Part shown: in pieces, positions 5,854 through 61,754 of the stretch
How the letters are laid out: every line of letters begins with the position of its first letter
Numbering within the stretch: position 1 is the first letter of the stretch
DNA from: Ruditapes philippinarum
Taxonomy: Eukaryota
Length of the DNA: 64,000 bases
Direction: 5' to 3'
Assembly: GCF_026571515.1 (NCBI RefSeq)
Contig: NW_026864584.1
Location: 1 to 64,000 of the forward strand
The notes under the pieces: model-generated
The model's database searches: none
What the model was told of the DNA's origin: nothing
The model's input: only the letters and a program-made list of their open reading frames with translations
Position numbers and translations under genes: made by a program

Positions 5854-8043
5854 TCAGGCAATTGTTTCATTCTTATCAGCCGGGAAAAAAGAACATACAG
5901 CACATGTGAGTTCTCTAGTGTTTTCATATGGAGGACACTTCAGTACCCCGCATGTAGCCTGGACGAAAAAGAAATATTTTTCATCTTTGGCTCCATTCCC
6001 GGCTTCCAATGCTTCTGGCTTTTCATCAACACAAACATATTCCGATGATCCAGCATGTGAGAAGTGACCAGCCATAAGATAACCACTGTACTCCAGAACA
6101 TAATCTTTATAACAGACGCTTCTTCCAGGAATCATTAATACATTATTGCGGGGGATTCTGCAAACTGCACAAGGCACGTCTTGGTAATGTAGATGTTTCC
6201 AGTATGGGTAATCGCCGGTGTGGTATTCAGCTCCGTATATTCTGTCGGCTGATTGGAAACCATCTATGTATTGACCCTATGTAGGATCTTTAGGCAAGCA
6301 CATGTAGTTTGAACCAGAACCCTTGTGGGTATAGTGACCACCAGCGGCATAACCTTCGTAAACCAGAAAGGCTCCTTTAGGACATATAGTCCTACCCCAA
6401 CGGGTATATGTTGACCCGTCAAATGATCTTTCGGCTCTGATCAATTTTTTCTTCATTTCTGTTATCATTTCTCTTGCATCTATAGTAATATAACAGAGAC
6501 ATATTCAGTATAAAGCAAACAAAAAAAAACTGTCCGCTTAGCGCTGTAGGGAGCGAAATGCCTTTATAATTCTTTGGTCGCAGGTTCGAATTTGGGGCGA
6601 ACAATTTCTCGGTTACAAATGATCATGGACTTCATGATAATTGATCTTGGACTTGAATTCAGAAATTATATGTGACTGGTAGTCGGTCACATGCGGTGAT
6701 GCTAGTAATTACAGGTTCATTATTCAGGTAAGCCGGTTAACTACCGGAATATGCTATGAACGTACATGTGTATCTGTTTTTCAGTATGTACAGTAAAACC
6801 TGTTTATAGTGACCTTCGATGGGAGAAAAGAAAAAATGTCATTATAGACAGGGAGTCACTGTAAACAGCCTCTACAGACTTTGGATATATGAAGATATTT
6901 TGCCAATATTGTGTTGAAAAGCAGGATTGTACCATACTTAGGGATTGGTTGTATTTTTTATTTATATTAAACTTATATTAAACATACAATGTATCATTTA
7001 TAAAAAAACAAGACAGTATTACAAGTGAATGTATCATTGGATAAGATTATAAACTGTACAATTACATTAGTATTTAAAAGTAACATCTTGATTAAAAATG
7101 TAATTTATTTTGTAAAAAAAGTTGTTTAAATTCAATTTTACTAATAAGATACAATATCTATAATAAAACTCTTATAGTACAATAAAAATGAATAAAGGTT
7201 AAGATTCTGTATTGATGTACAATTATCAAACATTGTTGTGAAAAAAATTGTGTTTAATTTGTTTAAAACCTTAAGGTACACATTCTGGTTTTCCAAACCG
7301 TAATATTCACCTTCTTATTTCCTTAACTTTTGTTTTTGCCTTGTCTTCCCTCATCCTTTGATTGCACTATCTTATTTCCTTGGAGCCACAATATGCCTTA
7401 GATATGCTTTAATTGTAATTTCTTAAAAACTTTAAATTTTTTGGTAACCCGATTCGAGTAACTCCTTTTGCAAAAGTCGCTTTGAACAGCTTTTATACCG
7501 TAACGGGAAACGCTAAATCATGGTCATTGTACAGACTAGAGAAGGAGTCGCTTCATTCAGACCATTTATATAAAAATACTGTTTGGCGCACTCAACTATG
7601 GTTACTAAAGACAGAACGTCGCTTTATACAGGGGGTCACTTGGACAGTCTTAACAGTAGTTAAAACTGACCTCAGGATTTTATATAATCGAGGCAGCAAC
7701 AAGTTTTGGATACTCCCTCATATCAAAGAATATACAAAAAATGTAAATCATTGTTTTCTTAGAATCTTAAGATGATATGAAATCATTCCATGAATTTATG
7801 AAAATATTTTTAAACTATTAACAAGATACAAAATGGATACTGATTACCGCTTAATTCATTTCTTAAACCATTGTTTTTCTCCTCTTGTTGTTTCATCTTC
7901 TCTTCTAGCACGATAAGTTTCTGCAAAACGTTGTATTCGTATTCAAATTTATTGTAACACGCGTGTGGCTCATCATTAGATAAACACATGGAAAAATGTA
8001 AATATCCAATAAGTAACACGATAAATATTATTTGTTCAGCCAT
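5854..8043 (-). pseudogene. Copy 1 (subfamily A): secreted coiled-coil + short-chain collagen C4 (spongin NC1-like) domain protein with an in-frame nonsense codon
   Basis: Exon 1 is 8043-7848 (MAEQIIFIVLLIGYLHFSMC...RNELS, donor G|GTAATC). Exon 2 is 6479-5854 (acceptor ctatAG|). The spliced frame has 273 codons, but the conserved Trp codon TGG is TAG at 6279-6277 (PKDPT*GQY). Confidence 0.88.
6791..7656. mobile_element. Tc1/mariner (pogo/Tigger-like) non-autonomous element in the intron of copy 1
   Basis: TA on both sides (6789-6790 and 7657-7658). Degenerate TIRs CAGTAAAACCTGTTTATAGTGACC / GGTCACTTGGACAGTCTTAACAG, with subterminal gtcact...acag repeats. Absent from the 540-bp intron of copy 2; the copy 1 intron is 1368 bp. 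Confidence 0.75.
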
Positions 8044-9325
8044 TTTTTTTTCACCAGAAAAATCCTTTTTTTTCAGAATATTACTAAAATCCCCAGAATC
8101 TGTGAACAGTTTTATCTGACTTCTTTTTTACGTTCAAGTTAAGTTATAGAATATATCATACTGCAGTAAACATGTTTTATTCAATTATATCTGCTTGCTC
8201 CCAGTTAAGATAAATGTTAGATTATCTATGATAACGTATTCTTAATGAGCATGATAGTTTACGCCCTGTACAGAGGAGGCCTTCTCGGAATGTGTAGCGT
8301 AATGTTTTTTTAAGATAAGACTAATGGAACTTTGGAAATGGTTTGAAACAGGTAAATGTAGTTTTATTTAAGACAAATTGTGCTAACGCTTCATTTTATG
8401 TCGAAAGGGTGGGTTGTGTTGTCTGATTCCCTTCTTTTCTAGTTCTTCACTGCTGATGCTTTGTGTCTATAGATAATATAAAATACATAAAATATTTGCT
8501 ACTTTTGAAGTGAGTGTCGATCGATTATTCTTTTTCTTAGAGTTGTAAAATAATTTATTTTATGTGATTGAACAGTTTATCATTATGAACTAATCATTAT
8601 TAACTGTAGCAAACGAATCTTTAACAAAATATAGTTAATCTTACATTAGCCTGACTATTGATATACATGTATTTATATGAAAATTTACCAAATTTACGAA
8701 AGCCCTCATATCCGACAAGTTGAATACAGACATTGACGTGGAACTTAAAGAATTGGTATTTATCAAGAACAAACATTATGATTTTGTTTCTTCTATTTGC
8801 TATAATGATAAATTGATAAAATCATACCTGCATTATTACTTCTTGATTATACTCAAACCAATTGTCATTTTTTTATTTATCAGGTTTATATTTTTCCGTC
8901 CTTAAACCGTACACATTCTACACTGCAGTAGTAAATTATTGTATAATGATGAGCTGAATGTCACATTAGTAAGGTCAATGACCTTTGATATTTACCAGAA
9001 TCATCATTCAATAACTGATTTATTATATGACCATATTAAAATTTTTCATTTGGTATTTTTCAAAGCTGTAGATGTCGTTTTACACACAAAAAAAACCTAA
9101 ATAAGCTGATGGAAAGCGCAAAAAGTGATAACCTATTTTTCGGCATTCGATACCATTCTAAAGCGAACAAATGTTCATAAGAAAGCAAAGCAAATCGTCG
9201 TTTCGTTTATTCGTCTTTTTAGAGAGAAAGAAAAAAGTGTGAATCTGAAATTTACCCAATTATTAATGCTTTACGTAACGTTGTTTTTGATTGATCAGCT
9301 AGAACTTTATATATATTACTTTACC

Positions 9326-9375
9326 GTTAAGACATTTACGATTGGTGTCTGTTAAGACATTTACGATTGGTGTCT
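9326..9375. repeat. Perfect 25-bp tandem duplication
   Basis: gttaagacatttacgattggtgtct occurs twice; the paralogous site near 22730 has one copy. Confidence 0.85.
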
Positions 9376-11774
9376 AATAGTATAATAAGCGCCACTTTTT
9401 ATTGCCTCATGACCAAGTTTGTTTTGAACGATAGCGCCGCGTTCAAATCATTTTCTATTGACCGTTAATCGCAACACGAGGAAATTGGAAGTCATAATAA
9501 TATTAATTAACATTAAGGTCAAATTCAATTTCTGTTGCTGTTTATCTATCATGAATTTTTAACACAGAATCAATTTATTAGACTAAATATGAATCACACC
9601 ATTACACTGATTATCTCAGCTTAAACAGCTACACTACACCCAGGAGATAATAATGCTTTCCATATAATAGTCTGATCTACGGATAAGGTGTAAATAATAA
9701 AATCCCCGAGGCTGTAGGAATTTTCTGATATTTGTACATGTTTTAATAATTAATTTAACTGTTTACATAAAAATAAATAGTTTCCATCATACTTCACTAA
9801 AAAAAATATCTGCAACGATTTGTATCGAATATACCACTTTGGTTATGTTCATTGTTCTTTTTAAATTGATAAGTAAATAAAGAAAACATCAGTGTATAAA
9901 TGAAAGGGGTGTAATTTATCAGTTTATGTATTTTCAAGAAATAAAAGTTGTCTCTCTTTGAGTTTATTTAAAAAAAATCACACATGTTCTTCCAATCGAG
10001 TGTACAATAGCATGACTTTCAGACCTCTTATGAGATACCGTGAAATAAAGCAAAGAATAAAATGATATTTCAATTTATAAGACAACTTTTGTATTGATAT
10101 TGTGGAGAGAAGAAATTATGATTAAGTCATTTAAATGAAACAGATTTTGTACGATTTTGTTTGTGCTCAGATTGTTTTATTTATTAAACAATAAACTCCA
10201 GATGTCTTAACACTAATTGGTTTTAACTGGCAAATGATTTTGTCTGTTAGCAAATGAATTGTAATTTAAAACTTAAAACATACAATATAACGATCTATTA
10301 TTGTCGTATTTCCTGGTTTCAAGTAGTTTGATTTTCTCTTCAATATGTATAGGGCCATGGCATACTACTCTATATCACTTTATATTGATTGTTTTAATAA
10401 TAGAATCCATGCCAGTTGAAAAGAATATTGAGTATATATATTCAATGGTTTGAACAAAACATAATGCAGCATGTTTTTCAAGGCTCACTTTGTTCATAAT
10501 AATAAACAACTGATATACCAATGAGAAAGTGACCCATATGTTTCTATTCCTTGTGTGCAGGATTCCTTCCTTGGAGGCTAATTTCATTCGTTATTTTGTT
10601 GGGATTCCAAAAAAAAATCCTTAATAGCTGTCAGTTGAATAATCAAATTACAAACCGAAAAATGACGGAAGTGAGTTCATCAGTTCAAGCACTATGTGTA
10701 CATTGACGGTTTCGATTTAATATTGTATCCGTCAAGTTAGATTTCATACAATGGCAGTTGTAAACATTAATAAACATTATGCAAATCATGGTAATTTACC
10801 ATAACGAGCCAATCTGTCTTCCGCACAATGGAGTCAATCTAATTGGACATGGATATCGCCTATAACAAAACAATGCTTCAAGAAGTGGTGGCAATTTTTT
10901 AATTCTATTCCGGCCACAAGTGAGTTAGCCGTCATTAGCCTAAACAATACTCCCCAAATGTGACCTAAACGTCAAACTGACATCTTTCTCGCACATAACC
11001 TCAAATGTCTCAATTTAGTTGTTTGATTAAACCTTATATGCTGTGTATTATTCGTTTGCAGTGATGTAACTATTTTTCCTCTTAATATCATAACAATAGA
11101 TGTTCAAAAAAGATTAATTCAATTTTCTTTGTAGTTTGCAATAATTCATATTAGATTATTTCTATCAGTACAGAGTGCTTTTCTTAGAGTTTCTGAACAT
11201 ACTTGACCTCCATTGCTGATTATTTAAGATAAAAAAAATTTGAATACAAAAAGAGACCATTTCAGTTTCACTTTACGAGTTATCAGAATGTATGACTTGA
11301 AGACAATTGCAATAATGATACGCTTGTGTCCAATTAACAAAATAATAATGGTCTTTTAACACATATTCCTGTAATTTAAGGCAGTCAGTATATTTGAGAT
11401 TGGATAACATAATTATCATGATTATAGATCTATTATCATTATAATGTATAAGTTAACAATTATGATGTTCATAGTGACAATAATTACAAATATGTTATAT
11501 GTTATCTGTTAGCTGTTACATTCATTACTTTTATGTTAAGATGGAATAATTTTAATTCTGTCTTTTAAATTTTGTGCATTTCATTGCCTTGTGTTGTTAG
11601 TATATTTGTGACATTTATTCTTTTTGAACAAAATCTTCATAAGAAGCAAACAGGAAGTATATGAAACTTTTCCTGTATTTAGATGACAACCGTTCCAATA
11701 TTGTATTTGAAAACCGTCATATATTCTATATTAAAACCGTCCTGATATTTATATTGAAACCGTTCCCATATTTA

Positions 11775-12183
11775 TGGTGACTGATTTGGTACACTTTGCG
11801 CGTTGCGTTGTCGATAGCGACAACACAACCGATATCGTTACCGCATTTTCGTCTTGTCGCTAGCGAAACGGGCCAAAACGGCGCTTTATAGCACTGTCGT
11901 CTTGTCATCATGTCGCTAGCGAAGCTGACCAAACGACGCGTTGTCGTACAGCGCGTTGTCGCGATGTCGCCCTGTCGCTTGGCTTTAATATATATCCAAA
12001 TAGCCAAATCTTTCGATTTGATCCGAGCGACAATGTGACATCGCGACAACACAACGCATGGCAACGTGCCGTTTGGCATGTATCGTTAGCGACAGGACGA
12101 CAAGACGACAGTGCCGTTTGGCGCTTTGTTGTGCTGTCGACAGCGACAACGCGACACACAAAAGTGTTCCAAATCAGCCACCA
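11775..12183. mobile_element. Palindromic MITE (TGGTG...CACCA ends, TA target) with internal tgtcg/cgaca repeats
   Basis: ta|tggtgactgatttggtacacttt ... aaagtgttccaaatcagccacca|ta. The arms are long inverted repeats. Orthologous insertions lie at ~705-1015 (garbled) and 28492-28573 (internally deleted). Confidence 0.85.
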
Positions 12184-15100
12184 TACATATTGCATGAAAA
12201 CCGTCACTGTATTCTATATGAAAACAGATACTATGTTCATGATATAACACTTTACCAAGAAAATTACTTTTATTTATTGCAATGATGTTTGCTAATATAT
12301 TTGTATATCAGTTATTGTTGCAGACCTTGACGGCAGATTGGCATATCCAATTGCCTACAATATCAATACAAAGTAACATAATGAAAGGTCAAAGGGAGTT
12401 CACACATCATGAGTATAGGAGGAAATTAATATGCTTTTAAAGATTGTATATATATATATATATGATTTAAACACATATGTTCGTGTAAATGTAATAATAT
12501 GGATCATAATAGATGTAATGGAAATCTTTTTATTTTAATGGTTTGTCAAGTAATTCACAATTGTATTACTATCATATTATGTCAAATTCAAAATATTTAA
12601 GTACTCTAATTAAGAATTGAAATAATAGATAATTGGGTGATTCGATACTGGTTTGTTGTTTGGCTTTGTATAAAAGTAACTGTCCTTATTGGCAATCAAT
12701 TATCACATTATCCATTTCATTTTATTCCTGAATTTGAATGTAGGGACTCAAGAAATAAATATTTTTTTCTATGGTAAACTTACACTCCAAGTGAAACAAT
12801 AACGAGAGGTTTGTGTCATGATAATAAATCTTTCATTGATAAAAATTATGCAAATCATTAGCAAAATGCTTAATTAACCAAAACCTTACCACAATATCTT
12901 AAATAAACACAATCTCCCAAAGCCGACAAATCAAATGAAGTTCAATGTTCAAGAGATTAATTCCAGGGTTTGTTTTGTTTTGTTTAATACATAAAAACAA
13001 TACAATATAATTATGTGCTCTTAGGAAATGTATTCTAAATCTGGAATTCTGTTGTAACAACCTGTATGCCATCATCCTGATAACTATGTGCATTGCTATC
13101 GGAATCATATTAAAGTTAACTGACAGTTAACTCACATAAGTCTATTAAATACTTACAAGCAACGTATGATATGTGTTTAATAACAAGTATATTGTTTGGT
13201 AAAACAGTTTGAAACGGACAGTAGTGTGGCATCACTTTTATGCATTTTTTTTATACTTTTTGAGTTTCTTATCAATGAATTTTGAACAGATTACTTTTAT
13301 GCATAAAGAATCATTAAAATTGATATACCTGTGACAAAACTGTCTTCTGTACATACTTGTACGCCTTTATTGTATAAAAAATCTAAATTAATTAATATCA
13401 TCATTTCATTTTAAATTGTGTTGAAAAATATGATAATCATCTAGTTTGTACAAAATATGAAATGTCGATTTACTAAACTATCTTATTAATATGATAAGGA
13501 GATTTATTTCTTTTCCGGTATCTGTATATTTTTCGTAATTTTTCCATACGTGCTGAGGCTATTAAATCACATTGAACATTGCTAAATAGAAACAATGAAG
13601 ACGAAGGAGAAACATATTGTTGGTAATATGTTCCAAGGAACATAATGATAAATTAGCCAATAATATAACCACATGATATCTTCTTATTATCAGTTGGCTC
13701 TTTGCAAGTAACCTCATGAATTATTATTCTTTGTAGAGAAGCCATACTGTTGGCAATGTGATTCCATGAACATAATGATAAATCGATCAAAAACATAACC
13801 ACATGATTCCTTCTTATTAAACAGAAATATCCGAAAAACAATTATTCTTTGTATTGTATGACAAATAACATATTTTCACAAATATAAGTGTAAACATGTC
13901 TTTTAAAATCAAAATCATGTTAAAATATCTATACAAGATATAACATGTTTTTAGGACTCGAGATATCAATTAAGCATCCAGTTCATTCATAAAACGTTCT
14001 CGACCTTCAAGCAAATATTGTTTCTGCCTTTCGTGAACACTTATATAAATAAAGTAATTATTAATTAAGTTATAGATAAGTGACGTTCAAATGGTAATTT
14101 GACTGTTAAAGGTCGCCGAACAAATTTTAACAACATTACAATTTTTCGCAGACTCAGATTGCTCTTGTTCAAGAACGGCAGTGGTATATGCGAATTTCTG
14201 TCCACACCCCTAGCAACAACTTAAACTATTTTAATACAATATTTATCCAAGGTCGTAAATCCGATTTTATTACAGAAAAAGTGTTTCTGAAATGAGCTAT
14301 TTACTACATAAAAAATGTAAATATTAGTTATGTCGATATTATTGAATATAAATGGACCTCTAAAGAACGCCAAAAACAGCAAAATTTAATATATTGTAGC
14401 CTAGGTTTGACTTAGCCTACTAATGGAAGGTATTGGTAATAACAAGCTTTTATATTGATAGTAAGTCAATTATAGAGATATTTTAGATGTTTTATTTCTG
14501 TTATGACTGTTAATAAAAAATGATACTGTAATAAATAAAGTCATTGAGAATTTACTTGTAAGTGGGTCTACGGCTTCATTTTTGCACATATATCAACAGA
14601 GCCAAATATGAAATCACCTTTTATATCACTAACATTATATCTTTTAATTTGTCCTTAGATATTGCTATTATTAGGTTCGAATTGTTGAATATACGAGTAT
14701 GAGTATCTGTGAAATATGAGTTATATATGCAATAACTTATTGCAAGATGTAAGAACCAACAATGTACTTGCTGTAGATAAACTGTAGATAACTGTCATTT
14801 GGAAAGTAATAAAACCTTGCTGTAACTCGCAAATGTTTCCTTCGTTACAATTCTTAAACATTTATTCCTCGATAAAATGTCATGTATTTCTTTCAATGTG
14901 ATGCGGCTTATAGGCTGCATCCTTAATATGTTGGATACACTTGTTTAGTATGACAGTTTAACTAATCCAAAATAATTTAGCTAATCCAAAATAATTATGA
15001 TAGTATGCCACCCCGGTGCGAGACAATGATTTGGCAATTATTCACAATTATTATTTTCTCAATGATATTGTCAAGTGAATCATAACAACACAGTGGGTTG

Positions 15101-17568
15101 CTCATGTAATTACCTTGTCTCCTTGATGTTGCCCTCATTTCTCCGAAAATCATCAAGAGTTTTTATATTATAGTGAAATGTTCACTTATGTCCTTACTGA
15201 GTTTTATCTTGGTTTGGAATAATGAGAGCTCTATCAATCATTTTGTATTGGTTTTGTGCATTCATAAAGACTTTAATCCAATATATTTTGTAAATGTTTG
15301 TATCTATATAAGATTTCGTGTATTTTACGATAATTTAACGATTCAGACCTAGTATTGACCGCATTTAGGTTTGCTTCAACAACGTAATTTGCTACAAATT
15401 GGTGTAAATTTAACCAATTGTAACATGTCAGGTAATAAAGACATTATGTGTGCCAGTATATAAGCAACTGAAATATAGAAGGTACATGGTTTGTGTAAAA
15501 TTTGTGCTCAGAAGAACTAAATATGCAAATGTTTATATTGGAAAACCTTTTTGTATATAATTTTAAGTCCGTTGTTGTATTTACATATTTCATGTGGCCC
15601 ATTGCATGGGAGAACTGTGTGTTGTAATCAATACTATTGGAGCAGGATATAAGAATAAAATAATTTAAGCTGTAGTTTTTGTTTTTCTACTAGTTTAACT
15701 CGTTATATTTATTATATATATTATTATATGATGAAATAGAAGCAAGTAGGATAGAAATTATCTGTTTCTACTGATATCATGATAATTTCATAATAATATA
15801 ACTTCAGGATTCTTTAATAACATATGTAGCACTTATATGTAGCATATCATTTTAGAACCGACAACATTTTATCGTAGTTATTCATTTATAGAGCCCATTC
15901 TTCGATAAATGAACTCAGTCTTAAATACATTTCTATTGTTTTTGAGACTTTAACTATTGTGACATACCCCTGCCGATTTTGCGACTCCGTAAAAACGGTA
16001 TTGCAAGGCCGCGTACATATTCATAAGTTGACGTGATGCCATCTGCGTTATATAATCATAGCGTTTTACGCGTTACACTATAGTCGCGTCATTGATAAAT
16101 GATTTTTTTTCACATTATGCACTCTATATTTTGAGTATGTGATAAATAGAATATTATATTCGTGTAAGTTCAATACTGAATTTTTTAAACTCGTTGAATT
16201 TAATAATGTTATTAGTATTGGACTTACACTTATTCAATACCCTTTATATATTTTGTTACTTACATTTTTTGTGAATCTACACTTTTGTTTAATCTAAAAC
16301 AGTTAACTTGTCATTATTATTTCAGATTTAAATACAATATCTTTGATAAGCTAAAACATTTCATTCACTCAAACTATAGCGTTTTATATAATCAGAATAT
16401 TCACTTCTTTAAAATGAAGATAATTATTCACACCATTACACCCATTATCTCCTGTAAACAGCTATGTGTTATTCTAGAGACACTTGGGTATCGAAATGAT
16501 AGCTTGATTGATGGACAAGATAAATACAATTCCCGTTGAAGTAGTAATATGGGTTATGTATTATCAAATTGTATATAACGGGAATACTTTTGAATTGCTC
16601 AGAGACCCTACTGAATCGCAAACTGGTTCAGTCTCATTAGTTTATCATATACAACACGCACTGTTCAATATGGGGTATATGTTGGCAATCACGTGTTGAA
16701 ATTCAAAAGCAGCGATTTAGTTGATGTAAAAAATTACAGTTACTTTTGAACAACTGTATGTATTATATAAAGCCATTTTCGAACACCCTGTAACAGTTAA
16801 AAGACCCTGCGAATCAAACGATAGCCGACAATAGCTTGACAAGTATATCTTAATATGTGTATAAATATTGATGATAATGAGTTATTCTAAACTAATTTAT
16901 GTATTGATATGCAAGACAGAAAAGTGCTTAGAAATGATGAAAAATAAATGTATATGTATATGGCTAGTTTGACATGGGGACTATTTTTCATGGACACGGC
17001 AAAGTCACTACGGAAATGCTATTTCGGCACATACATGATTAATTTCTCTCAGATTATGAGCAAAGATATATGGACAGGCAATCCATACATAAATCTTTCA
17101 AGAAAGTATTTACGAGAAGTCATCAATCTTTCCAAACAAATAAAACCAAATCTCAAGAAATGTCTGATAAAGAAAAGGCATGACAACTTGTCTAATATAC
17201 AGTAAAATGTCGAAAGCACAAATGCAAATCACACTTCTCTTGTAGATAAATGATATCTTTTATAACAGTTACGAACAAGGTTCAAGCTATATTATATTAA
17301 AAAAACGACGATAACATTCCATGTGTTCTGTATAATCTGAAGCGCTGATGCAAACCATTTTGTTGTTTACTTTTTTAAAGTTTACAAAGCCGTTAAGTAT
17401 TGCCCGAAAATATTAACCTGTCCATTTCGAATACATTATCCGGTGGGTGAACGTTTTTTTGTGTTATGTTATAGTTTTCAAAAGATACTCATTGACTAAT
17501 TACCTTAACGATATTTTGCTTCTATATGTTATTTTCTGGACGTTAATACAATAACAATGATTTAATTG

Positions 17569-18216
17569 TGTTATGTATGCAACATATTACATGTATATAG
17601 ATTATATCTGACCAGTTGGTATTTCCAATATTGTCATTGTTCTATTTTTAGAACATAAACTACATGTATGTACTAGAACGTTCTTAACTGTTGTGGAAAA
17701 CTCATGCATTATATTTAGATAGAAATTTCTGGAATGATCTTTACTGTTGAAGTTGCTAGATTATGATTACTGTAGTAAATGGAAGACTATTCTAGAAACT
17801 TCTTAGTTAATATATATAAGGAGACATTTTTCATTACTCTTACCTTTTAAGTCATCAGTGATCTATTAAGTCATCAGTTACCTTTTAAGAAGTCAATATA
17901 TTTGGAGTATTATTCAACTTGGATATTAAGTGAATTATTGGAGCTTGGATTTTAAAATAAATTATTCTTGTGGATTTTATTGTGGGAATTTATTCTAAAG
18001 TGTTCTTGGATTTAACTTGGATTTAAATGTGCTATTCAAAAAGGATCATTCCAGGATCAGACTAGACATTTATAATTTTCATTTTTATTTGGACTTCAGG
18101 TATTTGTAAACATAATTTGTTATTTTATTTTTCTTTAATAATTTTTCTGTAATAAATTTGTTATTGTTACAAGTTTGTTGCTGGCTTTTCTTTCTCGTTA
18201 CGCCTGGCTCGTAACA
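17569..18216 (+). mobile_element. Solo LTR (Ty3/Gypsy-type, 4-bp TSD)
   Basis: Begins TGTTATG and ends CGTAACA (inverted termini). ATTG is duplicated at 17565-17568 and 18217-18220. Internal TATA-like tatatataag (~17811) and AATAAA (18151). Confidence 0.8.
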
Positions 18217-20013
18217 ATTGTTTTTTATGTTTTATTTTGCTACTATTATAACATAACATTCCACTTACAGTCCCACTTTCTTCAAGTAAAAAAGCATATT
18301 ACATGACTGTAGAAGTTGTTAATTTTTGCGACGTGGAAATATTTGCGATTTTTGCGAATCAAAATCAATTGCAATTAATTTAGCCGGCAAAAGTGAAATC
18401 AAATTAAGTCTTCGGTGGCCATTTACACCTGTAAATATACCCGTTGGAGAAAAAAATCTCACTCAATACAAACAAACATATAACATGATTCAAAGTGCAT
18501 TTAACATTTAACAGTATGAAATAATAACGAAAACGGTTCATTATAAATTGTCGAACTGACCATTTCATAATATTTCTTTGAAAACATGTACATTGAAAAT
18601 AGCCACACCTGTTAAAAATATGGTTAACACTTGTTAATAACATCACCGATAACAAAATTATTTTATACAGGTAATAGTGTGACACTTGATGATTATTAAA
18701 ACAAATTAAAACCACTCGCTTGAATACATTTTCTGTATTGGTTAAATGATTTAATTTTTCTATTCATTTACTAGTATTAAGTTATTAAATGGTTATTACA
18801 AACGTGTTAATATAACGGGAGTTTCTGAAATCGTACTTTAGCAAATATTTCGGCACACAAAAAGTCCGTTTTTGTATTTTCGCAATTTTTTGTGACGTGC
18901 AAATATTCACTGATACAGTTTTTAAATATTATAAAACACATGTTTGTTTTATTTTTAAAGAAGGACAAGATAAGTTCTAACTGAGGCATAATGTGATTTT
19001 AACAACATAAACTGACTACTATTTACCGATATTTAGATATGGTATAACATTCGTACCAATAAGTTTGTTTAATAGACACCTAAACATACGGCCTTTATAT
19101 TTTATACTGGTTTATAGATCATATACAATTTTGTTTACGGAATCAATTTAAGCAATCGCAGAATGGAGTATCACTGAATTTTCCTCATATTTTTACATGA
19201 ACTGCAATAAGAGTCTTAAATTAACATAATTGTAATGCAATGTAATTCGTTATTGTATATAAACGTTTAATAATTTAAAATACAGTAAAACATGATATCA
19301 TATATAAATAACTACTTATTGATACGAGTATAATCACACAAGAAATGCTCTGTAAAAGATTTAATTTATGTACCAGTTTGTGTCATCCAAAGAAATAATC
19401 TACATCTATATAGAACGGATATAAAAAATACCTGTTTCTTAGACGACAGTGGTAAAGGCATTTTTATCATAACATTTACCAGTCAATCGGCTTTGATGTT
19501 TATCATCTTTTCTGTCTTAATTTTCTTTTCTATTTGATCATTTAAAATAAAACTAACATCTGACACGAGCCATGGGTACTATAATAATATAATAGATGAA
19601 AATAGTCCTTAGTATGAATTCTAGATGATACTTAAATAACAAAAATTCTGTTCGACACTAAGAGGTACATATCTTCCGTCCTATTTTTTGTTTTCAATTT
19701 GGATTGATGAGGTGTCTGAAAACATTTGGTTTTCTGATAATTAAAAGCTAAATTGATAAGTTAAGCAGTTTACCAACATGAATATATGCATTGAAATGAT
19801 AAAACTTGCTTATGAACTACAGAGGTAAATGTACTATACTTATCTAGTGGTATTGTGATAAACATCAAACTGAATTATGATTTAAGCAGATGTAATGGTT
19901 CATTTTTTTATATGAACCCAGTTCTATCTTTAATATAATAAAACAGAAACTATATGGGAAATGGTTTATAATATACATGCCATGATTATCTCCAGTACCA
20001 GTCTTTATATAAA

Positions 20014-25280: not shown

Positions 25281-25641
25281 TATAAAATGAACAGGTAAAA
25301 TTAGATGTTTTTACACATTTCTAACACAGTACCTACTTTAAAAATACGATACTGTATGGAAACTGCTATGATATTCATTTTAAAATAACACTGTCCTTTA
25401 ACACAACATTGATTCCATGAAACAACAAACTGACATATATGACACATGCACGCGGCTTGGAAAGTGGTTTCTGTAGCTTAAATTATTCTTAATCATTAAA
25501 ATATTGTTGATTTTGTTTTAATTTTCACAAAATCTGCTTCTTGAGGCTAAATAATATATAACATACAGTTGTATATAGTGTAAATATTTGATATCCATAG
25601 AAAAATTATGTCTGTTTTGCTAAAATTATTGTTCACTATTT

Positions 25642-48588: not shown

Positions 48589-48591
48589 CTT

Positions 48592-49196: not shown

Positions 49197-51119
49197 TATT
49201 TAATTTTATTATATTTTTGATCTATGTAATTTAACGACATAAATAATATTAATGTGTTAAACAGAAATTACCTTTTACAATTTCTTTTATTAAAAAAGTT
49301 GTTTGATATTCTTTATCATTATGTCGATATATTGATTCTGATTTCAATAGTAACTTTAAGATACCTTAGAACGTGAATATGAAATAACGAAAAAGTTGCT
49401 CAACTTATTTCTTAACCAGATGGGAATAGTTTGTCGCAAGTATATACAGATGTTGACATAACACGGAAAACACAAGCTAGAGAAAAAACAAACGCATGTT
49501 ACACCATAAACGAACGAGAGTTGAACACATGTTAAACAAACGAAATACGCAAAGACACACGCAAAACGATATACACAAAACGATAAACGCTCTCTCGAAC
49601 CTTTGAACGTATACAAAATAAAAACATTTCTAACCGTTCAATAAACTATAACTTTAGATCGCTATACAATGTATTTTAATGATTTTATTAAATGATAAGC
49701 ATGTTGATTCTTTAAGGGTTCATATTAAAAATACATCACACACATGAAATAAGTTTTAACAATAATGTCTGTCTGTATTTTGCATTAGTTTCGTCTTAAA
49801 ATCAATACCTTTAGTGCGGCGACAAGGAACACTTCCTCATTGCTGGTGGATCTGATCATCAAGGTCTGCCCTGTTAGAAAAAGTACTATTACATGAATGT
49901 CAAGCCAATTTAATAGACAAAAATTATTTCACAATATGCTAAAAATATTCATTCATATGAAAGGGTAAGAAACATGTGCATCCTGAAGGGGATTTGAACT
50001 TAAGACCATCAGAATACAATACATCGGCACCACAAAATGGACCCAGAACCCCCGGAATATCGAATCGCAGCTGTACGGCTCAACCCTCACCTAATAAATG
50101 ATCAGCTTTAGGAGGCTTATACCCTCATGGCACGATGTTGGGCGTCAGGTTAAGAAAGACGAAAGATCTCCGTACTTCCGTGATTTCGTATGAATGTGTA
50201 GAACAAGGGATTTGTTTAACAAATGAACTAGTCATAAAAATGATTTTCAAAAAGGCTATGTTTTTAATGAAATAATTGTTTTATTTCAATCTGAAATTGT
50301 GACAGGTATACACTGACATTTATCAAAATGATTGAAAAAAGTATACTAGTCTTATCCTTTATAACAAAAAAAATCCTGGTTTAAAAATCTGGGGAAAGGT
50401 GATTTTCGGAATTATTAATCACATCAAAATTACATGAAAATTGAAGACTCGGTTTGATTTTGTCTGAACATGAAGGATAATGAAAAAGTGCAACACCCCT
50501 CGCGCAACCTATACCCGGCTTGAGCGGTACTAAATTGTCAACATTTCAATCCTTGTCTTAATAAATCACCTCTATCTATCCAACAAGATGTATAATTTTG
50601 CATATTAAAGTTGTTAGAAGGATAGTGATCAGACTGTAATGTTGGTTTCTGTCTCTTGTTAAACTTAAGATTATTATTAAGATTCTAACAAAAGGTATTT
50701 ATTAACTTAAAATTTAGATTTTAAAATTTATTGACACTTTGCATGAAGGAGATATTACAGAAACTGTTCTGTTATTTTCCGTTATTCATAACAGATATGT
50801 GCTAAACATATAATAAATGTGTTGTTTATCAGACATTATTTGAAAATTATAACTTTACAATTTTTATCCGGTAAAGAAGAATATTATTTGCATGGTGTAA
50901 ATTGCTCTCAGTTAACATTTACATTTCAAAAATATGGACAAATTATATTAACTAAACGAAAGACATGTTCACTTAAATGTTAAGAAAACTGTAATCGCCC
51001 AGATAAATCTTTGAAATACCAACACATATTTGAAAAAGGGCCTTTAAATTCAAACAGTTTTTGTTCTCATAAATTGTATATATTTAAGCGTTATTAAACT
51101 TCAATTACATAAAAGGAAA

Positions 51120-52247
51120 ATGGCAGTCAGTCTTGTATTAAACGTTTTTCTTATCTTTTCATGCATTTGTTGCTTGGTGCATTGTGAATGTCCAAGAAAT
51201 GGAACATGTTGTGACCAGTTCCAGTGTGAATACAGTTTATACAAGAAACTTATTGAGTTAGAAAGCAAACTTGGTTCTTTGGAAATTCAATTAGAAGGTA
51301 ATTTTATTGATATTCACAAGCTCGTGATATCCTATTTTTATTTATCTATTGTTTATGACAGTTCGTTCGAACGGAAACAATTTTTATTCAAAACCAAAGA
51401 AGAACTGTTCTGTTTATAGACAAAATCACAAATTGTTAACCTTAGATTTAGTTGTCGGTGTTAGATTAACAAATAAATGAAATAAGCATTTTTTTAATTG
51501 GTGTTTTGACATAATTTATACTTTTTGGCAGCTATTCGCTAGGGACTTAAATTGTTGGTGATTATATAACAGACATTTGAAATTTGTTATTGAATGTGGT
51601 CGATTAGAAAAATGAAAATGCAAGTAAAATATCAAAATATGGTAAACTGAATTATATATGCGGAAATATTTTCAGAAAGTCGTAACAAAATAGAAAAAGT
51701 TCCAAAAAGCGGATCAACCTACGTACGATGGGGACGAACGACATGTAGAGGTGATTCAAAGGAAGTTTATAACGGATATGCCGCAGGGTCGCACCACGCG
51801 GAGCCTGGTGGAGCTGCCAATGCCCTTTGCCTTACAAAGTCACCTAAATGGGGACAGTATACGTCAACAGTTGAATCAGGCGGCGCCTTTATTTACGGGG
51901 CTGAGTATAGTGTGTACATGCACACTGACTGGAAGCACTTACAGGACCATGACGTACCTTGTGTGGTTTGCCAAGTTCCACGAAGTGATATTTTGATGGT
52001 CCCTGGCAGTAACATTTGCCCAACAGGATACAAGATAGAATACAATGGCTATCTAATGGCTGGACATACCCGAGGGTCTGTTGCGTCTGAATACCTCTGC
52101 GTAGATTCTCTTCCGGAGAAATTATATGGTGGCGACGGAGATAAAACAGCAAAAGTATTCTGTATCGTTCAAGCTATATGCGGTTCTCTTAAATGCCCAC
52201 CGTATGTGAATGGACGGGAACTTACTTGTGCTGTATGCTCACGTTAG
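51120..52247 (+). CDS. Copy 7 (subfamily B): secreted Cys-rich/coiled-coil + short-chain collagen C4 domain protein, 249 aa, intact
   Basis: Exon 1 is 51120-51297 (donor G|GTAAT). Exon 2 is 51676-52247 (ttttcAG|), reading ...KSGSTYVRWGRTTCRG...IYGAEY...CPPYVNGRELTCAVCSR*. Confidence 0.92.
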
Positions 52248-54703
52248 CTTTTGTGTTATATACTGTGCTTAAAAACATAAAAAAATGTTTCAGCTTTGAG
52301 AACTCAGATTGATTTTGATATCATGTTAATGTTAATAACAAGCAAATAAAGAAATAAACACATTTTCTCTGATTTGTTAACATAGATCAGTTGTTATGCC
52401 ACAATTATTGTAATACTTTTCTTGAAAATATCATAATTTTTAATAAAATTATTTTTTGCTAAAATGTAAACCATTATAAAATAAAAACAATTTAATCTTT
52501 GTTAAAAAAATGCAAATTTGAATGCAATTTATTTAAAATTTTAATGCGTTTGTGTTATATACTGTGCTTAAAAACATAAAAAAATGTTTCAGCTTTGAGA
52601 ACTCAGATTGATTTTGATATCATGTTAATGTTAATAACAAGCAAATAAATAAATAAATAAGCACACATTCTCTGATTTGTTAACATAGATCTGTTGTAAA
52701 ATCACAATTATTGTAATACTTTCTCGAAAATATCATAATTTTTAATAAAATTATTTTTGCTAAATGTAAAAATATTATAAAATAAAAACAATTTAATCTT
52801 TGTTAAAAAATGCAAATTTGAATGCAATTTATTTTAAAATTTTAATGCTATTTAATTTTATTATATTTTTGATCTATGTAATTTAACGACATAAATAATA
52901 TTAATGTGTTAACAGAAATTACCTTTTTACAATTTCTTTTATTAAAAAAGTTGTTTGATATTCTTTATCATTATGTCGATATATTGATTCTGATTTCAAT
53001 AGTAACTTTAAGATACCTTAGAACGTGAATATGAAATAACGAAAAAGTTGCTCAACTTATTTCTTAACCAGATGGGAATAGTTTGTCGCAAGTATATACA
53101 GATGTTGACATAACACGGAAAACACAAGCTAGAGAAAAAACAAACGCATGTTACACGCTAAACGAACGAGAGTTAAACACATGTAAAACAGACGAAATGC
53201 ACAAAGATTCATGCAAAACGATATACGCAAAACGATAAACGCTCTCTCGAAACCTTTGAAAGTACACAAAATAAAAACATTTCTAACAGTTCAATAAAAT
53301 AAAACTTAAGATCGCTATATTATTTTAATGATTTGATTAAATGATAAGCATGTTGATTCTTTAAGGGTTCATATTAAAAAATACATCACACACATGAAAT
53401 AAGTTTTAACAATAATGTCTGTCTGTATTTTGCATTAGTTTCGTCTTAAAATCAATACCTTTAGTGCGGCGACAAGGAACACTTCCTCATTGCTGGTGGA
53501 TCTGATCATCAAGGTCTGCCCTGTTAGAAAAAGTACTATTACATGAATGCCAAGCCAATTTAATAGACAAAAATTATTTCACAATATGCTAAAAATATTC
53601 ATTCATATGAAAGGGTAAAAACATGTGCATCCTGAAGGGGATTTGAACTTAAGACCATCAGAATACAATACATCGGCACCACAAAATGGACCCAGAACCC
53701 CCGGAATATCGAATCGCAGCTGTACGGCTCAACCCTCACCTAATAAATGATCAGCTTTAGGAGGCTTATACCCTCATGGCACGATGTTGGGCGTCAGGTT
53801 AAGAAAGACGAAAGATCTCCGTACTTCCGTGATTTCGTATGAATGTGTAGAACAAGGGATTATTTTAACAAATGAACTAGTCATAAAAATGATTTTCAAA
53901 AAGGCTATGTTTTTAATAAAATAATTGTTTTATTTCAATCTGAAATTGTGACAGGTATACACTGACATTTATCAAAATGATTGAAAAAAGTATACTAGTC
54001 TTATCCTTTATAGGTATAAAAATCTGGGGAAAGGTGATTTTCGGAATTATTTATCACATCAAAATTACATGAAAGTTGCAGACTCGGTTTGATTGTGTCT
54101 GAACATGAAGGATAATGAAAAAGTGCAACATCCCTCGCGCAACCTACCTCCAGTTTGAGCGGTACTAAACTGTCAACATTTCAACCATTGTCTTCATAAA
54201 TCACCTCTATCTATCCAACAAGATGTATAATTTTGCATATTAAAGTTATACCTTCTTACCTTTTCCATTTTGTACAGCTAGCAATGAGTATATACAACAT
54301 CAATACGACTTTTGAAAGTTTCGTACACTCTTTTTTATATTTATGATGTTGACTCTTACATTGGCACTTGACATATAATGTTATTTGTTTCTGCTAATGA
54401 ATACAGTTCTTGAAGGTTTTATTCATACTTAATGAAATTTTGGTAAATGTTTATGTAAATGTCTTCAGAAGATAAAAGGAATACTATAATTATCATACAT
54501 TTATTTTATGCTTGTGAGTGGATTACTGTTTATCCGTGAAAATTATATTTGACGATTTCACAGTGAAAATTTTAAAAATATAATTTCACAATTTTTAAAG
54601 AATTTCTAGTCTAATATAAATTCGCCGTAAGTAACGGAAATAAGGTGGAATGGTCTACTAGAATTGTTAGTTTTTATTATTAAAACAAGCGATCATTCAT
54701 ATA

Positions 54704-60577: not shown

Positions 60578-61754
60578 ATGATAATGGCAGTCAGTATTGT
60601 ATTATACGTAAATATTTTCCTAGCAAGCATTTTTTATTTTGTTCATTGTGATGGAACGTATTGTGACAAGTACCAGTGTGAATACAGTTTATTCAAGAAA
60701 GTTATTGAGTTGGAAAGCAAGCTTGATTCTTTGGAATTTAGATTAGAAGGTATTTTATTTCTATACAACTATTCCTGAGCCCTATTAGAAGTCTCTTGAT
60801 AATCCGACATTGAAAAACAAATATACAAAAATATGTACATAATTTTACTTTTTGTCTCATTTGTTGAAAACAAAATTCTATTTACTAAATACCGCAAATT
60901 GCTCTCTTTTGAAAAAAGTCAAGAATGCTTAAACTTGAATTAAAACATATTTTAGTTATGCCAGAGCTAAATCATTTACATAACTTTTAAGACAACTTAG
61001 TTCTTATAGCTCTGATAGCTCTTTGTTAGGTTCTTAAATCGTAGGGTCTTAAATTGTTGGTTATTTTATAAGAAACAATCTATAGTTGTACTTCAATAAG
61101 GTTGCTTAGAAAAATAAAATAACAAATAAAAAAAGCATCAAGTGGTAAATTTGACATAAATGATTCGGATTTTTTTCAGAAAATCGTAAGGAATCGGAAA
61201 ACGCTCCTAGAAGCGGCGGATCAACCTATGTACGATGGGGACGAACGACATGTAGAGGAGATTCAAAGGAAGTTTACAATGGATATGCCGCGGGGTCGCA
61301 GTACAGGCAGTCTGGTGGAGCAGCTAATGCCCTTTGCCTTACAAAGTCACCTAAATGGGGACGATATACATCAAAGGTAGAATCAGGCGGCGCCTATATT
61401 TACGGGGCTGAATATAGTGTGTACATGTACACGGACTGGACGTACTTGCATGACCATGACGTACCTTGTGTGGTTTGCCAAGTTCCACGAAGTGATATTT
61501 TGATGGTTCCTGGCAGTAACATTTGCCCAACAGGATACAAGTTCGAATACAATGTCTATCTAATGGCTGGACATTACGGAAAGTCTGCTGCTTCTGAATA
61601 CCTCTGCGTAGATTCTCTTCCGGAGAAATTATATGGTGGCGACGGAGATAAGAACGCAAAATTATTTAGTTTTGTTCAAGCTAAGTGTGGTTCTCTTAAA
61701 TGTCCACCGTATGTAAATGGACAGGAACTTACTTGTGCTCTATGCTCACGCTAG
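60578..61754 (+). CDS. Copy 8 (subfamily B): secreted coiled-coil + short-chain collagen C4 domain protein, 246-248 aa, intact
   Basis: Exon 1 is 60578 (or the homologous ATG at 60584) to 60749. Exon 2 is 61180-61754, after a 430-bp GT-AG phase-1 intron, and reads RSGGSTYVRWGRTTCRG...CPPYVNGQELTCALCSR*. Confidence 0.92.

What the first reader, a model, noticed from the sequence alone, without database searches (positions are those of the whole stretch)
5854..61754. Eight-gene birth-and-death cluster of collagen-less 'short-chain collagen C4' secreted proteins: candidate uncharacterised recognition/lectin-like family
Seen: eight paralogs share one two-exon design (signal peptide + short Cys/coiled-coil stalk, then a spongin-type NC1-like domain). 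None has Gly-X-Y repeats, and three of the eight are disabled. Known: the domain is the C-terminal module of sponge short-chain collagens and is related to collagen IV NC1; bivalve immune families such as C1q-domain proteins and fibrinogen-related proteins often use a coiled coil in place of collagen and expand in tandem arrays. Inference: these are oligomeric soluble binding proteins (haemolymph, mucus or shell matrix) rather than collagens, and they turn over like an immune family.
Basis: partly seen in the sequence, partly recalled or inferred. Interest (0 to 1): 0.8.

Follow-up and report, generated by a model that had tools for sequence, protein, structure and literature searches.

The report
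Clam cluster of collagen-less spongin-type genes
A Manila-clam locus holds eight tandem copies (three broken) of a secreted protein that keeps the globular head of sponge-type short collagens but has a helical stalk in place of the collagen part; the family is very large in this genome and its function is unknown.

Summary
The window (Ruditapes philippinarum by a 100% protein match) carries eight two-exon paralogs in two subfamilies: A = c1-c5 on the minus strand, B = c6-c8 on the plus strand. Each encodes a signal-like peptide, a Cys-bearing helical stalk and a ~180-residue head with 10 Cys. No Gly-X-Y exon occurs anywhere in the window. Three copies are disabled: c1 by TAG, c6 by TAA, c3 by a deletion plus a 311-bp repeat insertion. 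Spliced contigs confirm the c4 and c5 introns. NCBI already models c2, c7 and c8.

The head is clearly homologous to the C-terminal domain of cnidarian and deuterostome "short-chain collagen C4" proteins. It is only remotely like collagen IV NC1: Foldseek's significant hits are all NC1, but superposition is poor and Pfam C4 does not match.

This is one of many clusters. The genome has at least 150 scored loci, public data hold 5006 cluster representatives, and all molluscan members sampled lack collagen repeats.

The immune or lectin role is untested. Pairwise dN/dS is 0.10-0.44, which indicates purifying selection. Literature points to gill and secretory expression.

The scan noted the same kind of cluster before on another piece of this genome (s1-793114).

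Verdict: real, a new variant of a known family, of moderate interest.

The parts
7848..8043 (-). c1 exon 1: signal-like peptide, Cys29, first part of the helical stalk. The open reading frame is intact.
   Evidence: donor G|GTAATC
5854..6479 (-). c1 exon 2: end of stalk plus head. Disabled by TAG at 6277-6279, where c2 has TGG.
21180..21375 (-). c2 exon 1, intact.
20014..20639 (-). c2 exon 2, intact. It is 100% identical over 207 aa to NCBI 'short-chain collagen C4-like [Ruditapes philippinarum]' (P0002).
37140..37200 (-). c3 exon 1 remnant. Only the last ~20 codons remain; the start codon, signal peptide and Cys motif are deleted.
36007..36903 (-). c3 exon 2 remnant. It is frame-broken and split by a 311-bp interspersed repeat at 36186-36496.
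42331..42526 (-). c4 exon 1, intact.
   Evidence: spliced contig joint 42104/42331
41476..42104 (-). c4 exon 2, intact. This head was used for the structure model (pLDDT 89).
44540..44735 (-). c5 exon 1, intact. It has Ser in place of the Cys at the presumed -1 position of the signal peptide.
   Evidence: joint 44256/44540
43631..44256 (-). c5 exon 2, intact.
47417..47594 (+). c6 exon 1. Disabled by TAA at 47588-47590, two codons before the donor; c7 has TTA there.
48017..48588 (+). c6 exon 2. The reading frame is open.
51120..51297 (+). c7 exon 1, intact. Cys-rich short stalk.
   Evidence: P0263
51676..52247 (+). c7 exon 2, intact. It equals NCBI LOC132726177 (P0263, 249 aa, 100% identity).
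60578..60749 (+). c8 exon 1, intact. The start follows NCBI model P0264.
61180..61754 (+). c8 exon 2, intact. It equals NCBI LOC132726174 (P0264, 248 aa).
48..38125 (.). Three diverged segmental repeat units of ~14-16 kb (about 48-9736, 11297-23079 and 26731-38125). They carry c1, c2 and c3 respectively and are 73-90% identical in blocks.
46911..54247 (.). Young 3.7-kb tandem duplication (46911-50612 versus 50614-54247, 95.3% identity) carrying c6 and c7.

Best explanation
This is a tandem, duplicating-and-decaying cluster of genes for secreted 'stalk plus head' proteins. They belong to the molluscan, collagen-less branch of the spongin short-chain-collagen-related (SSCC) family.

Exon 1 encodes a cleavable-looking signal peptide, one Cys (subfamily A) or three to five Cys (subfamily B), and the start of an amphipathic helix. 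After a phase-1 intron, exon 2 finishes the helix and encodes a ~180-residue, 10-Cys beta-rich head. The head is built of two homologous halves, which is the NC1-like module of short-chain collagens.

Shown here: the gene structures, transcription and splicing of c4 and c5, homology of the head to collagen-bearing relatives, the absence of collagen repeats, and the family's size and turnover.

Inferred:
- The helix forms a parallel, probably trimeric, disulfide-tied coiled coil that takes over the job of the lost triple helix, as in bivalve C1qDC type II proteins.
- The coiled coil presents a cluster of heads.
- The heads act outside the cell by self-association or by binding a partner.
- The proteins are made by secretory epithelia such as gill and mantle.

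I lean towards a mucus or matrix scaffold role (about 0.4) over immune recognition (about 0.25). The rest is open.
For: Eight loci with conserved two-exon, phase-1 structure.

Transcript and model support:
- Spliced contigs for c4 and c5.
- RefSeq models for c2, c7 and c8.

N-terminal features:
- Hydrophobic N-termini, with maximum 10-residue hydropathy of 2.2-3.1.
- Heptad a/d positions are 50-86% hydrophobic, against 22-25% at other positions.

The AlphaFold model of the Mercenaria ortholog P0004 shows helix 3-17, one 52-residue helix at 32-83 (block pLDDT 86-97), then the beta head.

Head:
- pLDDT 89 and pTM 0.83.
- Ten invariant Cys in 53 sequences.
- The two halves are 33% identical, E 4e-12.

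Homology to collagen-bearing 'short-chain collagen C4' proteins comes from the profile search. It gave 5006 representatives at E<=1e-3 and 1401 at E<=1e-30. Among the best 150 are Nematostella, Acropora, Branchiostoma, Ptychodera and Amphiura proteins carrying 15-31 G-X-Y triplets.

All 15 Foldseek hits at E<=1e-3 are collagen IV NC1.

At least 150 scored loci lie in this genome, 141 rows of them outside this contig.

Literature (passages read):
- A gill-enriched transcript in Mytilus (PMC4581086).
- A ~32-kDa gill protein spot (PMC5302490).
- A peptide in octopus ink (PMC10142993).
- Nematostella spongin-likes in neuroglandular cells (PMC12549020).
Against: - Signal peptide, coiled coil and oligomeric state rest on crude scores and a monomer model. 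No SignalP, COILS or multimer run was possible.
- The link to collagen IV NC1 is weak in superposition. Foldseek TM is 0.21-0.27. VIA-align gives Z 7.0 and 5.3 only against single-chain NC1 trimers and Z 2.1-2.8 against single chains. The wide search gave nothing above Z 2.3.
- Sequence profiles do not reach NC1. hhalign against the clam's own collagen IV exon gave probability 15.6%.
- Expression is low in the one raw RNA run that showed it (depth about 1-3 with about 4% of the run read). No tissue is known for these particular genes.
- No function has been shown for any member in the papers I could search.
Confidence: 0.72

Rival explanations
1. One reading: the proteins are soluble oligomeric pattern-recognition or lectin-like molecules of haemolymph or mucus, and the family turns over like an immune family such as C1qDC or FREP.
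For: - The layout (signal, coiled coil, globular head) and the tandem expansion match those described for bivalve C1qDC type II proteins (PMC6835236).
- Three of eight copies are dead, and duplicates are young.
- The genome holds at least 150 loci.
- 'Short-chain collagen C4' is listed among expanded families in a Pinna defensome comparison (PMC13093298, one table row read).
- In the Mytilus gill table it sits beside C1q, apextrin and fucolectin transcripts.
Against: - No carbohydrate-binding or other recognition domain is detected.
- Pairwise dN/dS is 0.10-0.18 in subfamily A and 0.37-0.44 in B, with no whole-gene sign of diversifying selection.
- No paper in the held library reports binding or a response to challenge for the family in clams.
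- The head's only known relatives are matrix-assembly modules.
Confidence: 0.22
2. The proteins are structural extracellular-matrix or secretion-scaffold components (gill or mantle matrix, periostracum, shell or byssus-related). Their NC1-like heads associate head to head, as collagen IV NC1 does, and so link coiled-coil rods into networks.
For: - The head is homologous to that of spongin-type short-chain collagens, and all significant Foldseek hits are NC1 assembly modules.
- The best whole-head alignments are to assembled single-chain NC1 trimers.
- Purifying selection.
- Pedal-disc (adhesion) up-regulation in Exaiptasia (PMC6626399).
- Authors of an oyster study class the gene with shell formation (PMC12040131).
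- It is an abundant enough gill protein to be seen as a 2-DE spot.
Against: - More than 150 loci with frequent pseudogenes is unusual for a core structural protein.
- The stalk is only about 30-52 residues long.
- Fidler et al. report that spongin NC1 lacks the HSQ motif and, by modelling, the domain-swap region used in collagen IV assembly (PMC5395295). HSQ is absent here in 7 of 7 heads.
- No localisation data exist.
Confidence: 0.35
3. The genes are ordinary short-chain collagens whose collagen exons lie upstream and were missed.
For: The family name, and the fact that relatives in cnidarians and deuterostomes carry 5-31 G-X-Y triplets.
Against: - No run of four or more G-X-Y triplets in any frame of the 64-kb window, apart from one low-complexity spot.
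- Exon 1 starts with Met plus a hydrophobic signal-like segment in 7 of 8 copies.
- The c5 transcript contig runs 42 nt upstream of the ATG without a joint.
- RefSeq models of c7 and c8 and Mercenaria orthologs start at the same Met.
Confidence: 0.03
4. The whole array is decaying and non-functional, and the open copies are open only because they are young.
For: Three of eight copies are broken. Two of these carry a single nonsense change in otherwise conserved frames. Read depth is low.
Against: - dN/dS is well below 1 even between old pairs (c4-c5 dS 1.08, dN/dS 0.13).
- Both subfamilies have Mercenaria orthologs in starred clades.
- c4 and c5 are spliced and transcribed.
- All 10 Cys are kept in all seven readable heads.
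Confidence: 0.03

Closest known systems
Spongin short-chain collagen-related (SSCC) proteins, also called 'short-chain collagen C4' (Exposito 1991 and Aouacheria 2006 recalled or seen in reference lists only; Fidler 2017, PMC5395295, passages read)
   Same: - The C-terminal head is homologous. Collagen-bearing Nematostella, Acropora, Branchiostoma, Ptychodera and Amphiura members are among the best 150 hits to the clam-based profile, at E 1e-70 or better.
- The head has ten conserved Cys, which is the count Fidler et al. give for spongins (7 shared plus 3 of their own).
- There is no HSQ motif.
- Pfam C4 does not match, as the Halisarca genome paper reports for sponge spongins (PMC12749355).
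   Different: - There is no collagenous domain at all. A signal peptide, Cys and a 30-52-residue helix stand in its place.
- The family is strongly expanded, with at least 150 loci in one genome.
- Direct comparison with a sponge sequence was not done, because no tool gave me one.
Collagen IV NC1 domain (Pfam C4, PF01413)
   Same: - Two tandem homologous Cys-rich halves.
- All 15 Foldseek hits at E<=1e-3 are NC1 chains.
- Each half aligns to an NC1 subdomain at Z 2.1-2.8 over 58-74 residues with 15-26% identity.
- There is a weak motif-level hhalign match around the C-x-V-C...IP..C..GW...GY segment.
   Different: - PF01413 finds only the clam's true collagen IV loci on two other contigs, with 14 matches and none here.
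- No sequence or profile hit to any NC1 in the PDB.
- Global superposition is poor, with TM 0.21-0.27.
- There is no long triple helix and no 7S region.
Bivalve C1q-domain-containing proteins, 'sC1q-like type II' (PMC6835236)
   Same: - The same logic of architecture: signal peptide, a coiled coil instead of a collagen tail, and a globular head.
- Expansion by tandem duplication.
- Collagen tails are rare in bivalves.
   Different: The head is unrelated, with no C1q Pfam match. Binding functions are documented for C1qDC and for none of these proteins.

Membership tests
SSCC-related (spongin short-chain collagen) family | C-terminal head homologous to that of recognised short-chain collagens | tested here: met
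   The profile of 53 clam-type sequences scores named 'short-chain collagen C4' proteins of Nematostella (P0202), Acropora (P0191), Branchiostoma (P0188, P0190) and Ptychodera (P0201) at E 1e-77 to 1e-79. No sponge sequence was available to me. A Pinctada member is tabulated with E 9.35E-22 to CAS4_EPHMU (PMC11270918).
SSCC-related (spongin short-chain collagen) family | Ten conserved cysteines in the head and no HSQ motif | tested here: met
   Ten invariant Cys columns in 53 sequences. There are 10-11 Cys and no HSQ in 7 of 7 readable heads. Which seven Cys correspond to the collagen IV ones was not mapped.
SSCC-related (spongin short-chain collagen) family | Short Gly-X-Y collagenous domain N-terminal to the head | tested here: not met
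   No G-X-Y run in the exons or anywhere in the window. Transcripts and RefSeq models begin at the signal peptide. These are therefore family members by their head, not collagens.
Collagen IV NC1 (Pfam C4, PF01413) | Match to the C4 profile | tested here: not met
   - 0 families for 3 window heads at E<=1.
- PF01413 is not among the families listed for 53 members (25 of 77 shown, the single-member ones down to E 0.061).
- In the genome, PF01413 hits only contigs C9304 and C10374.
Collagen IV NC1 (Pfam C4, PF01413) | C4 fold: two tandem subdomains | tested here: inconclusive
   - The internal repeat is clear (E 4e-12).
- Foldseek gives E 1e-4 and probability 1.00, but TM 0.27 and rmsd about 18 Å.
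- VIA gives Z 7.0 (154 aligned, rmsd 5.3) only against a single-chain NC1 trimer.
- The wide search's best NC1 hit is Z 2.1.
Collagen IV NC1 (Pfam C4, PF01413) | Trimer and hexamer assembly of heads | not testable with these tools
Soluble coiled-coil pattern-recognition proteins of bivalves (C1qDC type II-like; analogy only) | Signal peptide, coiled coil and globular head, expanded in tandem | tested here: met
   definition from PMC6835236
Soluble coiled-coil pattern-recognition proteins of bivalves (C1qDC type II-like; analogy only) | Known recognition domain (C1q, fibrinogen-related, C-type lectin) | tested here: not met
   No such Pfam family matched in 3 window heads or in the listing for 53 members.
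Soluble coiled-coil pattern-recognition proteins of bivalves (C1qDC type II-like; analogy only) | Ligand or microbe binding; induction by challenge | not testable with these tools
   This needs bench work. Sample names of the runs are coded, so no tissue or treatment could be read.

The most novel reading that the evidence does not exclude
Molluscs turned the ancient spongin/NC1-like head into a large family of soluble, coiled-coil-trimerised recognition proteins. This would be a third arm of bivalve humoral immunity beside C1qDC and FREPs. It would have arisen by the same collagen-to-coiled-coil swap and would be kept diverse by tandem birth and death. If so, it would also give the first function to the SSCC-related family, whose role has been an open question since 2006.
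Probability: 0.2. Interest if true: 0.8.

Novelty: new variant of a known kind. Interest (0 to 1): 0.45.

Why it matters
The SSCC-related family is old (cnidarians to amphioxus), large (5006 cluster representatives) and has no known function outside sponges.

In this sample, every named molluscan protein has lost the collagen part and carries a helical stalk instead. One clam genome holds at least 150 loci arranged in turning-over tandem clusters. This parallels what happened to C1q proteins in bivalves.

That makes two things testable with simple reagents: what the NC1-like head does on its own, and whether bivalves have a further unrecognised expanded family of secreted oligomers. I found no paper in the held library that describes the collagen-less form or its expansion. 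Aouacheria et al. 2006 is not held and I could not read it, so it may already mention collagen-less members.

Tried and rejected
Sequence routes to a named domain gave nothing:
- Pfam on three heads returned 0 families.
- Pfam on 53 family members gave only Collagen, in 2 members, plus coiled-coil noise.
- phmmer and a profile against PDB sequences gave only chance hits at E 0.31-1.7, none of them collagen IV.

Other attempts:
- hhalign of the family profile against single exon translations of the clam's own collagen IV gave one weak match (probability 15.6%, 37 columns) and one non-match. A proper NC1 family profile could not be built, because no tool returned NC1 sequences.
- The Foldseek-independent structure search found nothing above Z 2.3.
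- A stalk-only search (P0004 residues 20-85) found only itself and P0006, 2 of 25 candidates. There is thus no sign that the stalk module is shared with other head families, although the test is weak for 66 residues.
- The ESM Atlas gave molluscan 'short-chain collagen C4-like' clusters and, at rank 13 (score 0.85, a lead only), a cluster with PF01413 in 11% of members.
- I did not count pseudogenes genome-wide. The 'stops inside' column also counts natural stop codons read through at the shorter C-termini; c8 is flagged that way.
- The RNA evidence is thin. The two raw-read RNA runs gave depth about 1-3 (X21) or none outside a repeat (X23). X1 and X2 are only guessed to be RNA, although their GT..AG-spliced contigs argue for cDNA. 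X2 also shows one non-canonical joint, 44254/44531, which I take for a divergent paralog or allele.
- Five other ORFs of at least 110 aa in the window have no Pfam match, and there are no tRNA genes.
Differential-expression tables of clam challenge and tissue transcriptomes may hold these genes.
Exons were treated apart. Full-length statements rest on stored database proteins: P0002, P0263 and P0264, which are NCBI's own models of c2, c7 and c8, and the Mercenaria ortholog P0004.

Full report
WHAT IS THERE. The window is G000:C13071:1-64000, from a 1.41-Gb genome in 15,874 contigs. It has about 30% G+C and no N. The organism is Ruditapes philippinarum or something indistinguishable from it:
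- Exon 2 of copy c2 is 100% identical over 207 residues to NCBI 'short-chain collagen C4-like [Ruditapes philippinarum]' (P0002).
- c7 is 100% identical to LOC132726177 (P0263).
- c8 corresponds to LOC132726174 (P0264).
- All three proteins are recorded on one 84,761-bp contig.

THE EIGHT COPIES. A tblastn with the c4 head finds eight loci and nothing else, as 11 HSPs. Mercenaria N-termini locate exon 1 of each.
- Subfamily A (minus strand) comprises c1 (8043-7848, 6479-5854), c2 (21375-21180, 20639-20014), c3 (remnants 37200-37140 and 36903-36007), c4 (42526-42331, 42104-41476) and c5 (44735-44540, 44256-43631).
- Subfamily B (plus strand) comprises c6 (47417-47594, 48017-48588), c7 (51120-51297, 51676-52247) and c8 (60578-60749, 61180-61754).
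- All introns are phase 1 with GT..AG ends and are 226-1368 nt long.
- The c4 and c5 introns are confirmed by spliced contigs of run X1, with joints 42104/42331 and 44256/44540 and ends CT..AC on the + strand. The c5 contig reaches 42 nt upstream of the ATG with no further joint.
- NCBI's spliced c7 and c8 proteins read exactly across my junctions, and their lengths (249 and 248 aa) equal the exon sums.

DISABLED COPIES.
- c1 has TAG at 6277-6279 where c2 has TGG.
- c6 has TAA at 47588-47590 where c7 has TTA. This is the only difference in the 177 nt of exon 1.
- c3 has lost the start codon, signal peptide and Cys motif, and its exon 2 is frame-broken.
- c3's exon 2 is also split by a 311-bp element. 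That element has at least 1682 candidate copies in the genome, and the 39 other copies scored are 95-98% identical to it.

NO COLLAGEN. A six-frame scan of all 64 kb for four or more consecutive G-X-Y triplets finds only a G-rich low-complexity spot at 34925-34964.

ARCHITECTURE. Exon 1 peptides begin with a hydrophobic segment whose maximum 10-residue hydropathy is 2.2-3.1.
- Subfamily A then has Cys20, probably the -1 residue of the signal peptide (my inference from the small residues at -3 and -1), and Cys29. A conserved F-E-Y-E-Y...L-Q-K-L motif follows.
- Subfamily B has five further Cys in c6 and c7, and three in c8, before a shorter helix.
- In the best heptad register, a/d positions are hydrophobic in 50-86% of cases, against 22-25% elsewhere. 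This is a crude home-made score.

The AlphaFold2 model of the full-length Mercenaria ortholog P0004 (48-sequence alignment, mean pLDDT 87) gives helix 3-17, an unstructured 18-31, one continuous helix 32-83 and then the beta-rich head. Both models are monomers, so the oligomeric state is inferred, not shown.

THE HEAD. The c4 head models with pLDDT 89.0 and pTM 0.83.
- In a 53-sequence alignment, 24 columns are invariant and ten of them are Cys.
- All seven readable heads keep 10-11 Cys, and none has HSQ.
- The two halves of the head are homologous, with 33% identity over 84 residues and E 4e-12.

RELATION TO KNOWN FAMILIES. By sequence the head matches nothing curated: no Pfam family and no PDB sequence. 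PF01413 finds only the clam's true collagen IV genes on contigs C9304 and C10374, with 14 matches from 19 candidates. The Halisarca genome paper reports the same blindness of PF01413 for sponge spongins (PMC12749355, passages).

Homology to recognised short-chain collagens is nevertheless unambiguous. The family profile finds 5006 representatives at E<=1e-3, 3431 at E<=1e-10 and 1401 at E<=1e-30 among 1.84 billion. The best 150 include proteins with 15-31 G-X-Y triplets. Their sources name them 'short-chain collagen C4(-like)' of Nematostella, Acropora, Branchiostoma and Ptychodera; the Amphiura hit is named only 'uncharacterized protein'. The Nematostella proteins of this name are presumably the 'spongin-like' proteins of PMC12549020. 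I did not check that link.

By structure the picture is mixed:
- All 15 Foldseek hits at E<=1e-3 are collagen IV NC1 chains (best E 1e-4, probability 1.00), but TM is only 0.21-0.27 and rmsd 15-19 Å.
- VIA-align on Foldseek's list gives Z 7.0 (154 residues, rmsd 5.3) and Z 5.3 (150 residues, rmsd 5.0) against two single-chain NC1 trimers. The alignment spans different NC1 units there.
- The same method gives Z 2.1-2.8 for one half of the head against one NC1 subdomain.
- The search of 48,161 representatives without Foldseek gives only Z 2.3 (a GNAT protein, taken as noise) and Z 2.1 (NC1).

I read this as follows. Each half is C4-subdomain-like, but the modelled packing of the two halves differs from that within one NC1 chain. 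The remote homology to NC1 claimed in the literature (Aouacheria 2006, not read; Fidler 2017, PMC5395295, passages) is compatible with my data but not proven by them.

HOW GENERAL IS THE COLLAGEN-LESS FORM.
- Of the 120 best homologs of c4, 5 have four or more G-X-Y triplets. They are amphioxus, sea cucumber and three unnamed sequences. No protein with a molluscan name has them.
- Of all 262 stored proteins at that point, 25 had five or more triplets. Of the 94 new representatives of at most 400 aa, 15 did.
- The alignment of 48 full-length proteins shows the same signal, Cys and helix layout in Ruditapes, Mercenaria, Mya and Dreissena, among others.
- A quick maximum-likelihood tree of 65 heads (one row dropped) needs only one change between the collagen-bearing rows (12: cnidarians, echinoderms, hemichordate, amphioxus) and the collagen-less rows (53: all molluscs sampled, the annelid Owenia and one amphioxus row). 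The branch has support 62 only, and the sample was chosen by likeness to clam queries and by length.
- Subfamily A groups with Mercenaria P0004 and P0006 (99*), and subfamily B with Mercenaria P0265 (99*). Both subfamilies therefore predate the split of the two venerid genera.
- c7 and c8 (98*) duplicated later. The same probably holds for c2, c4 and c5, but support there is 83-88 and unstarred.

TURNOVER AND SELECTION.
- Self-comparison shows three diverged 14-16-kb repeat units carrying c1, c2 and c3 (73-90% identity in blocks). It also shows a 3.7-kb tandem duplicate carrying c6 and c7 (95.3%).
- Nei-Gojobori estimates on exon 2 are c1-c2 dS 0.17 and dN/dS 0.10, c4-c5 dS 1.08 and 0.13, c6-c7 dS 0.05 and 0.44, and c7-c8 dS 0.24 and 0.38. 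Exon 1 gives 0.10-0.59.
- The copies have thus been under purifying selection, which is looser in B. The two nonsense copies died recently or are segregating.
- In the whole genome, 150 matches were scored out of 249 candidates. Nine rows are this cluster's and 141 lie on other contigs, often in groups (C7941, C1255, C4546, C11431 and others). This is a lower bound.
- Another first-stage note (s1-793114) describes such a cluster on another piece of the genome.

EXPRESSION AND FUNCTION.
- Fourteen small runs guessed to be RNA hold 10-28% of the sampled words of the c4-c5 stretch. Two of them carry spliced contigs.
- One raw RNA run shows depth about 1-3 over c4 exon 2 and c5 exon 1 with about 4% of the run read. 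Another shows none.
- Samples are coded, so the tissue is unknown.

From papers (passages read):
- 'Short-chain collagen C4' is among the top gill-specific and gill-enriched transcripts in Mytilus galloprovincialis (PMC4581086).
- It is a ~32-kDa spot in the M. edulis gill proteome (PMC5302490).
- A peptide of the head occurs in octopus ink (PMC10142993).
- It is up in the Exaiptasia pedal disc (PMC6626399).
- It is down in oyster gill on plastic substrate and is classed by the authors with shell formation (PMC12040131).
- It is listed among families differing between two Pinna species (PMC13093298).
- Spongin-likes of Nematostella are mostly in neuroglandular cells (PMC12549020).

These point to secretory epithelia. 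None tests a function.

MOST LIKELY MECHANISM. The shown and inferred steps are set out under the best explanation. Because subfamily A has a single stalk Cys per chain, disulfides could link trimers into higher oligomers; this is speculation. Whether the heads build a scaffold or recognise foreign ligands is not decided by my data.

VERDICT. The object is a new variant (collagen-less, helix-stalked, strongly expanded) of a known family. It is partly annotated already and functionally uncharacterised. Interest is moderate.

Noticed in passing
window 36186-36496: A 311-bp interspersed element is inserted in c3 exon 2. The genome has at least 1682 candidate copies, and the 39 other copies scored are full-length and 95-98% identical to it, so it is a young, very abundant short repeat (SINE- or MITE-like). 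ARAGORN finds no tRNA-like part.
   Followed up: partly
window 43416-43457: A ~40-nt stretch between c4 and c5 has very high depth in all four runs (for example X2 word depth 281 in its bin). Loose ends differ on both sides, so it is a short sequence shared by many transcripts or repeats elsewhere.
   Followed up: no
window 48591-49196 and 52247-52848: A 304-bp unit lies directly downstream of the c6 stop, duplicated in tandem (2.0 copies, 97% match). The same pair lies downstream of c7.
   Followed up: no
window 54809-55584: A satellite-like array with period 171, 4.3 copies and 75% matches lies between c7 and c8.
   Followed up: no
window 41476-44735 (c4, c5): No protein of 97% identity or more to c4 or c5 was among the 120 hits listed (the best for c4 is 96%, a JGI 'hypothetical protein'). 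Both genes are nevertheless intact and appear in spliced contigs, so they may lack RefSeq models.
   Followed up: partly
window 44254-44531: A contig of run X2 shows a non-canonical joint (ends AT..TT on the + strand, skipping 276 nt) close to the canonical c5 intron. It probably comes from a divergent allele or paralog laid on c5.
   Followed up: no
G000:C8906:20474-22436 and 117781-118297: Another contig holds heads 78-84% identical to c4, two of them with internal stops. It is a closely related second cluster or a haplotig.
   Followed up: no
window 6480-7847: The c1 intron is 1368 nt, against 226-540 nt in c2-c5. It has evidently gained inserted sequence.
   Followed up: no
proteins P0121, P0122: Some public gene models of 3800-3950 aa contain 6-9 heads in a row. 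They are probably tandem genes fused by automatic annotation, or else true multi-head proteins.
   Followed up: no
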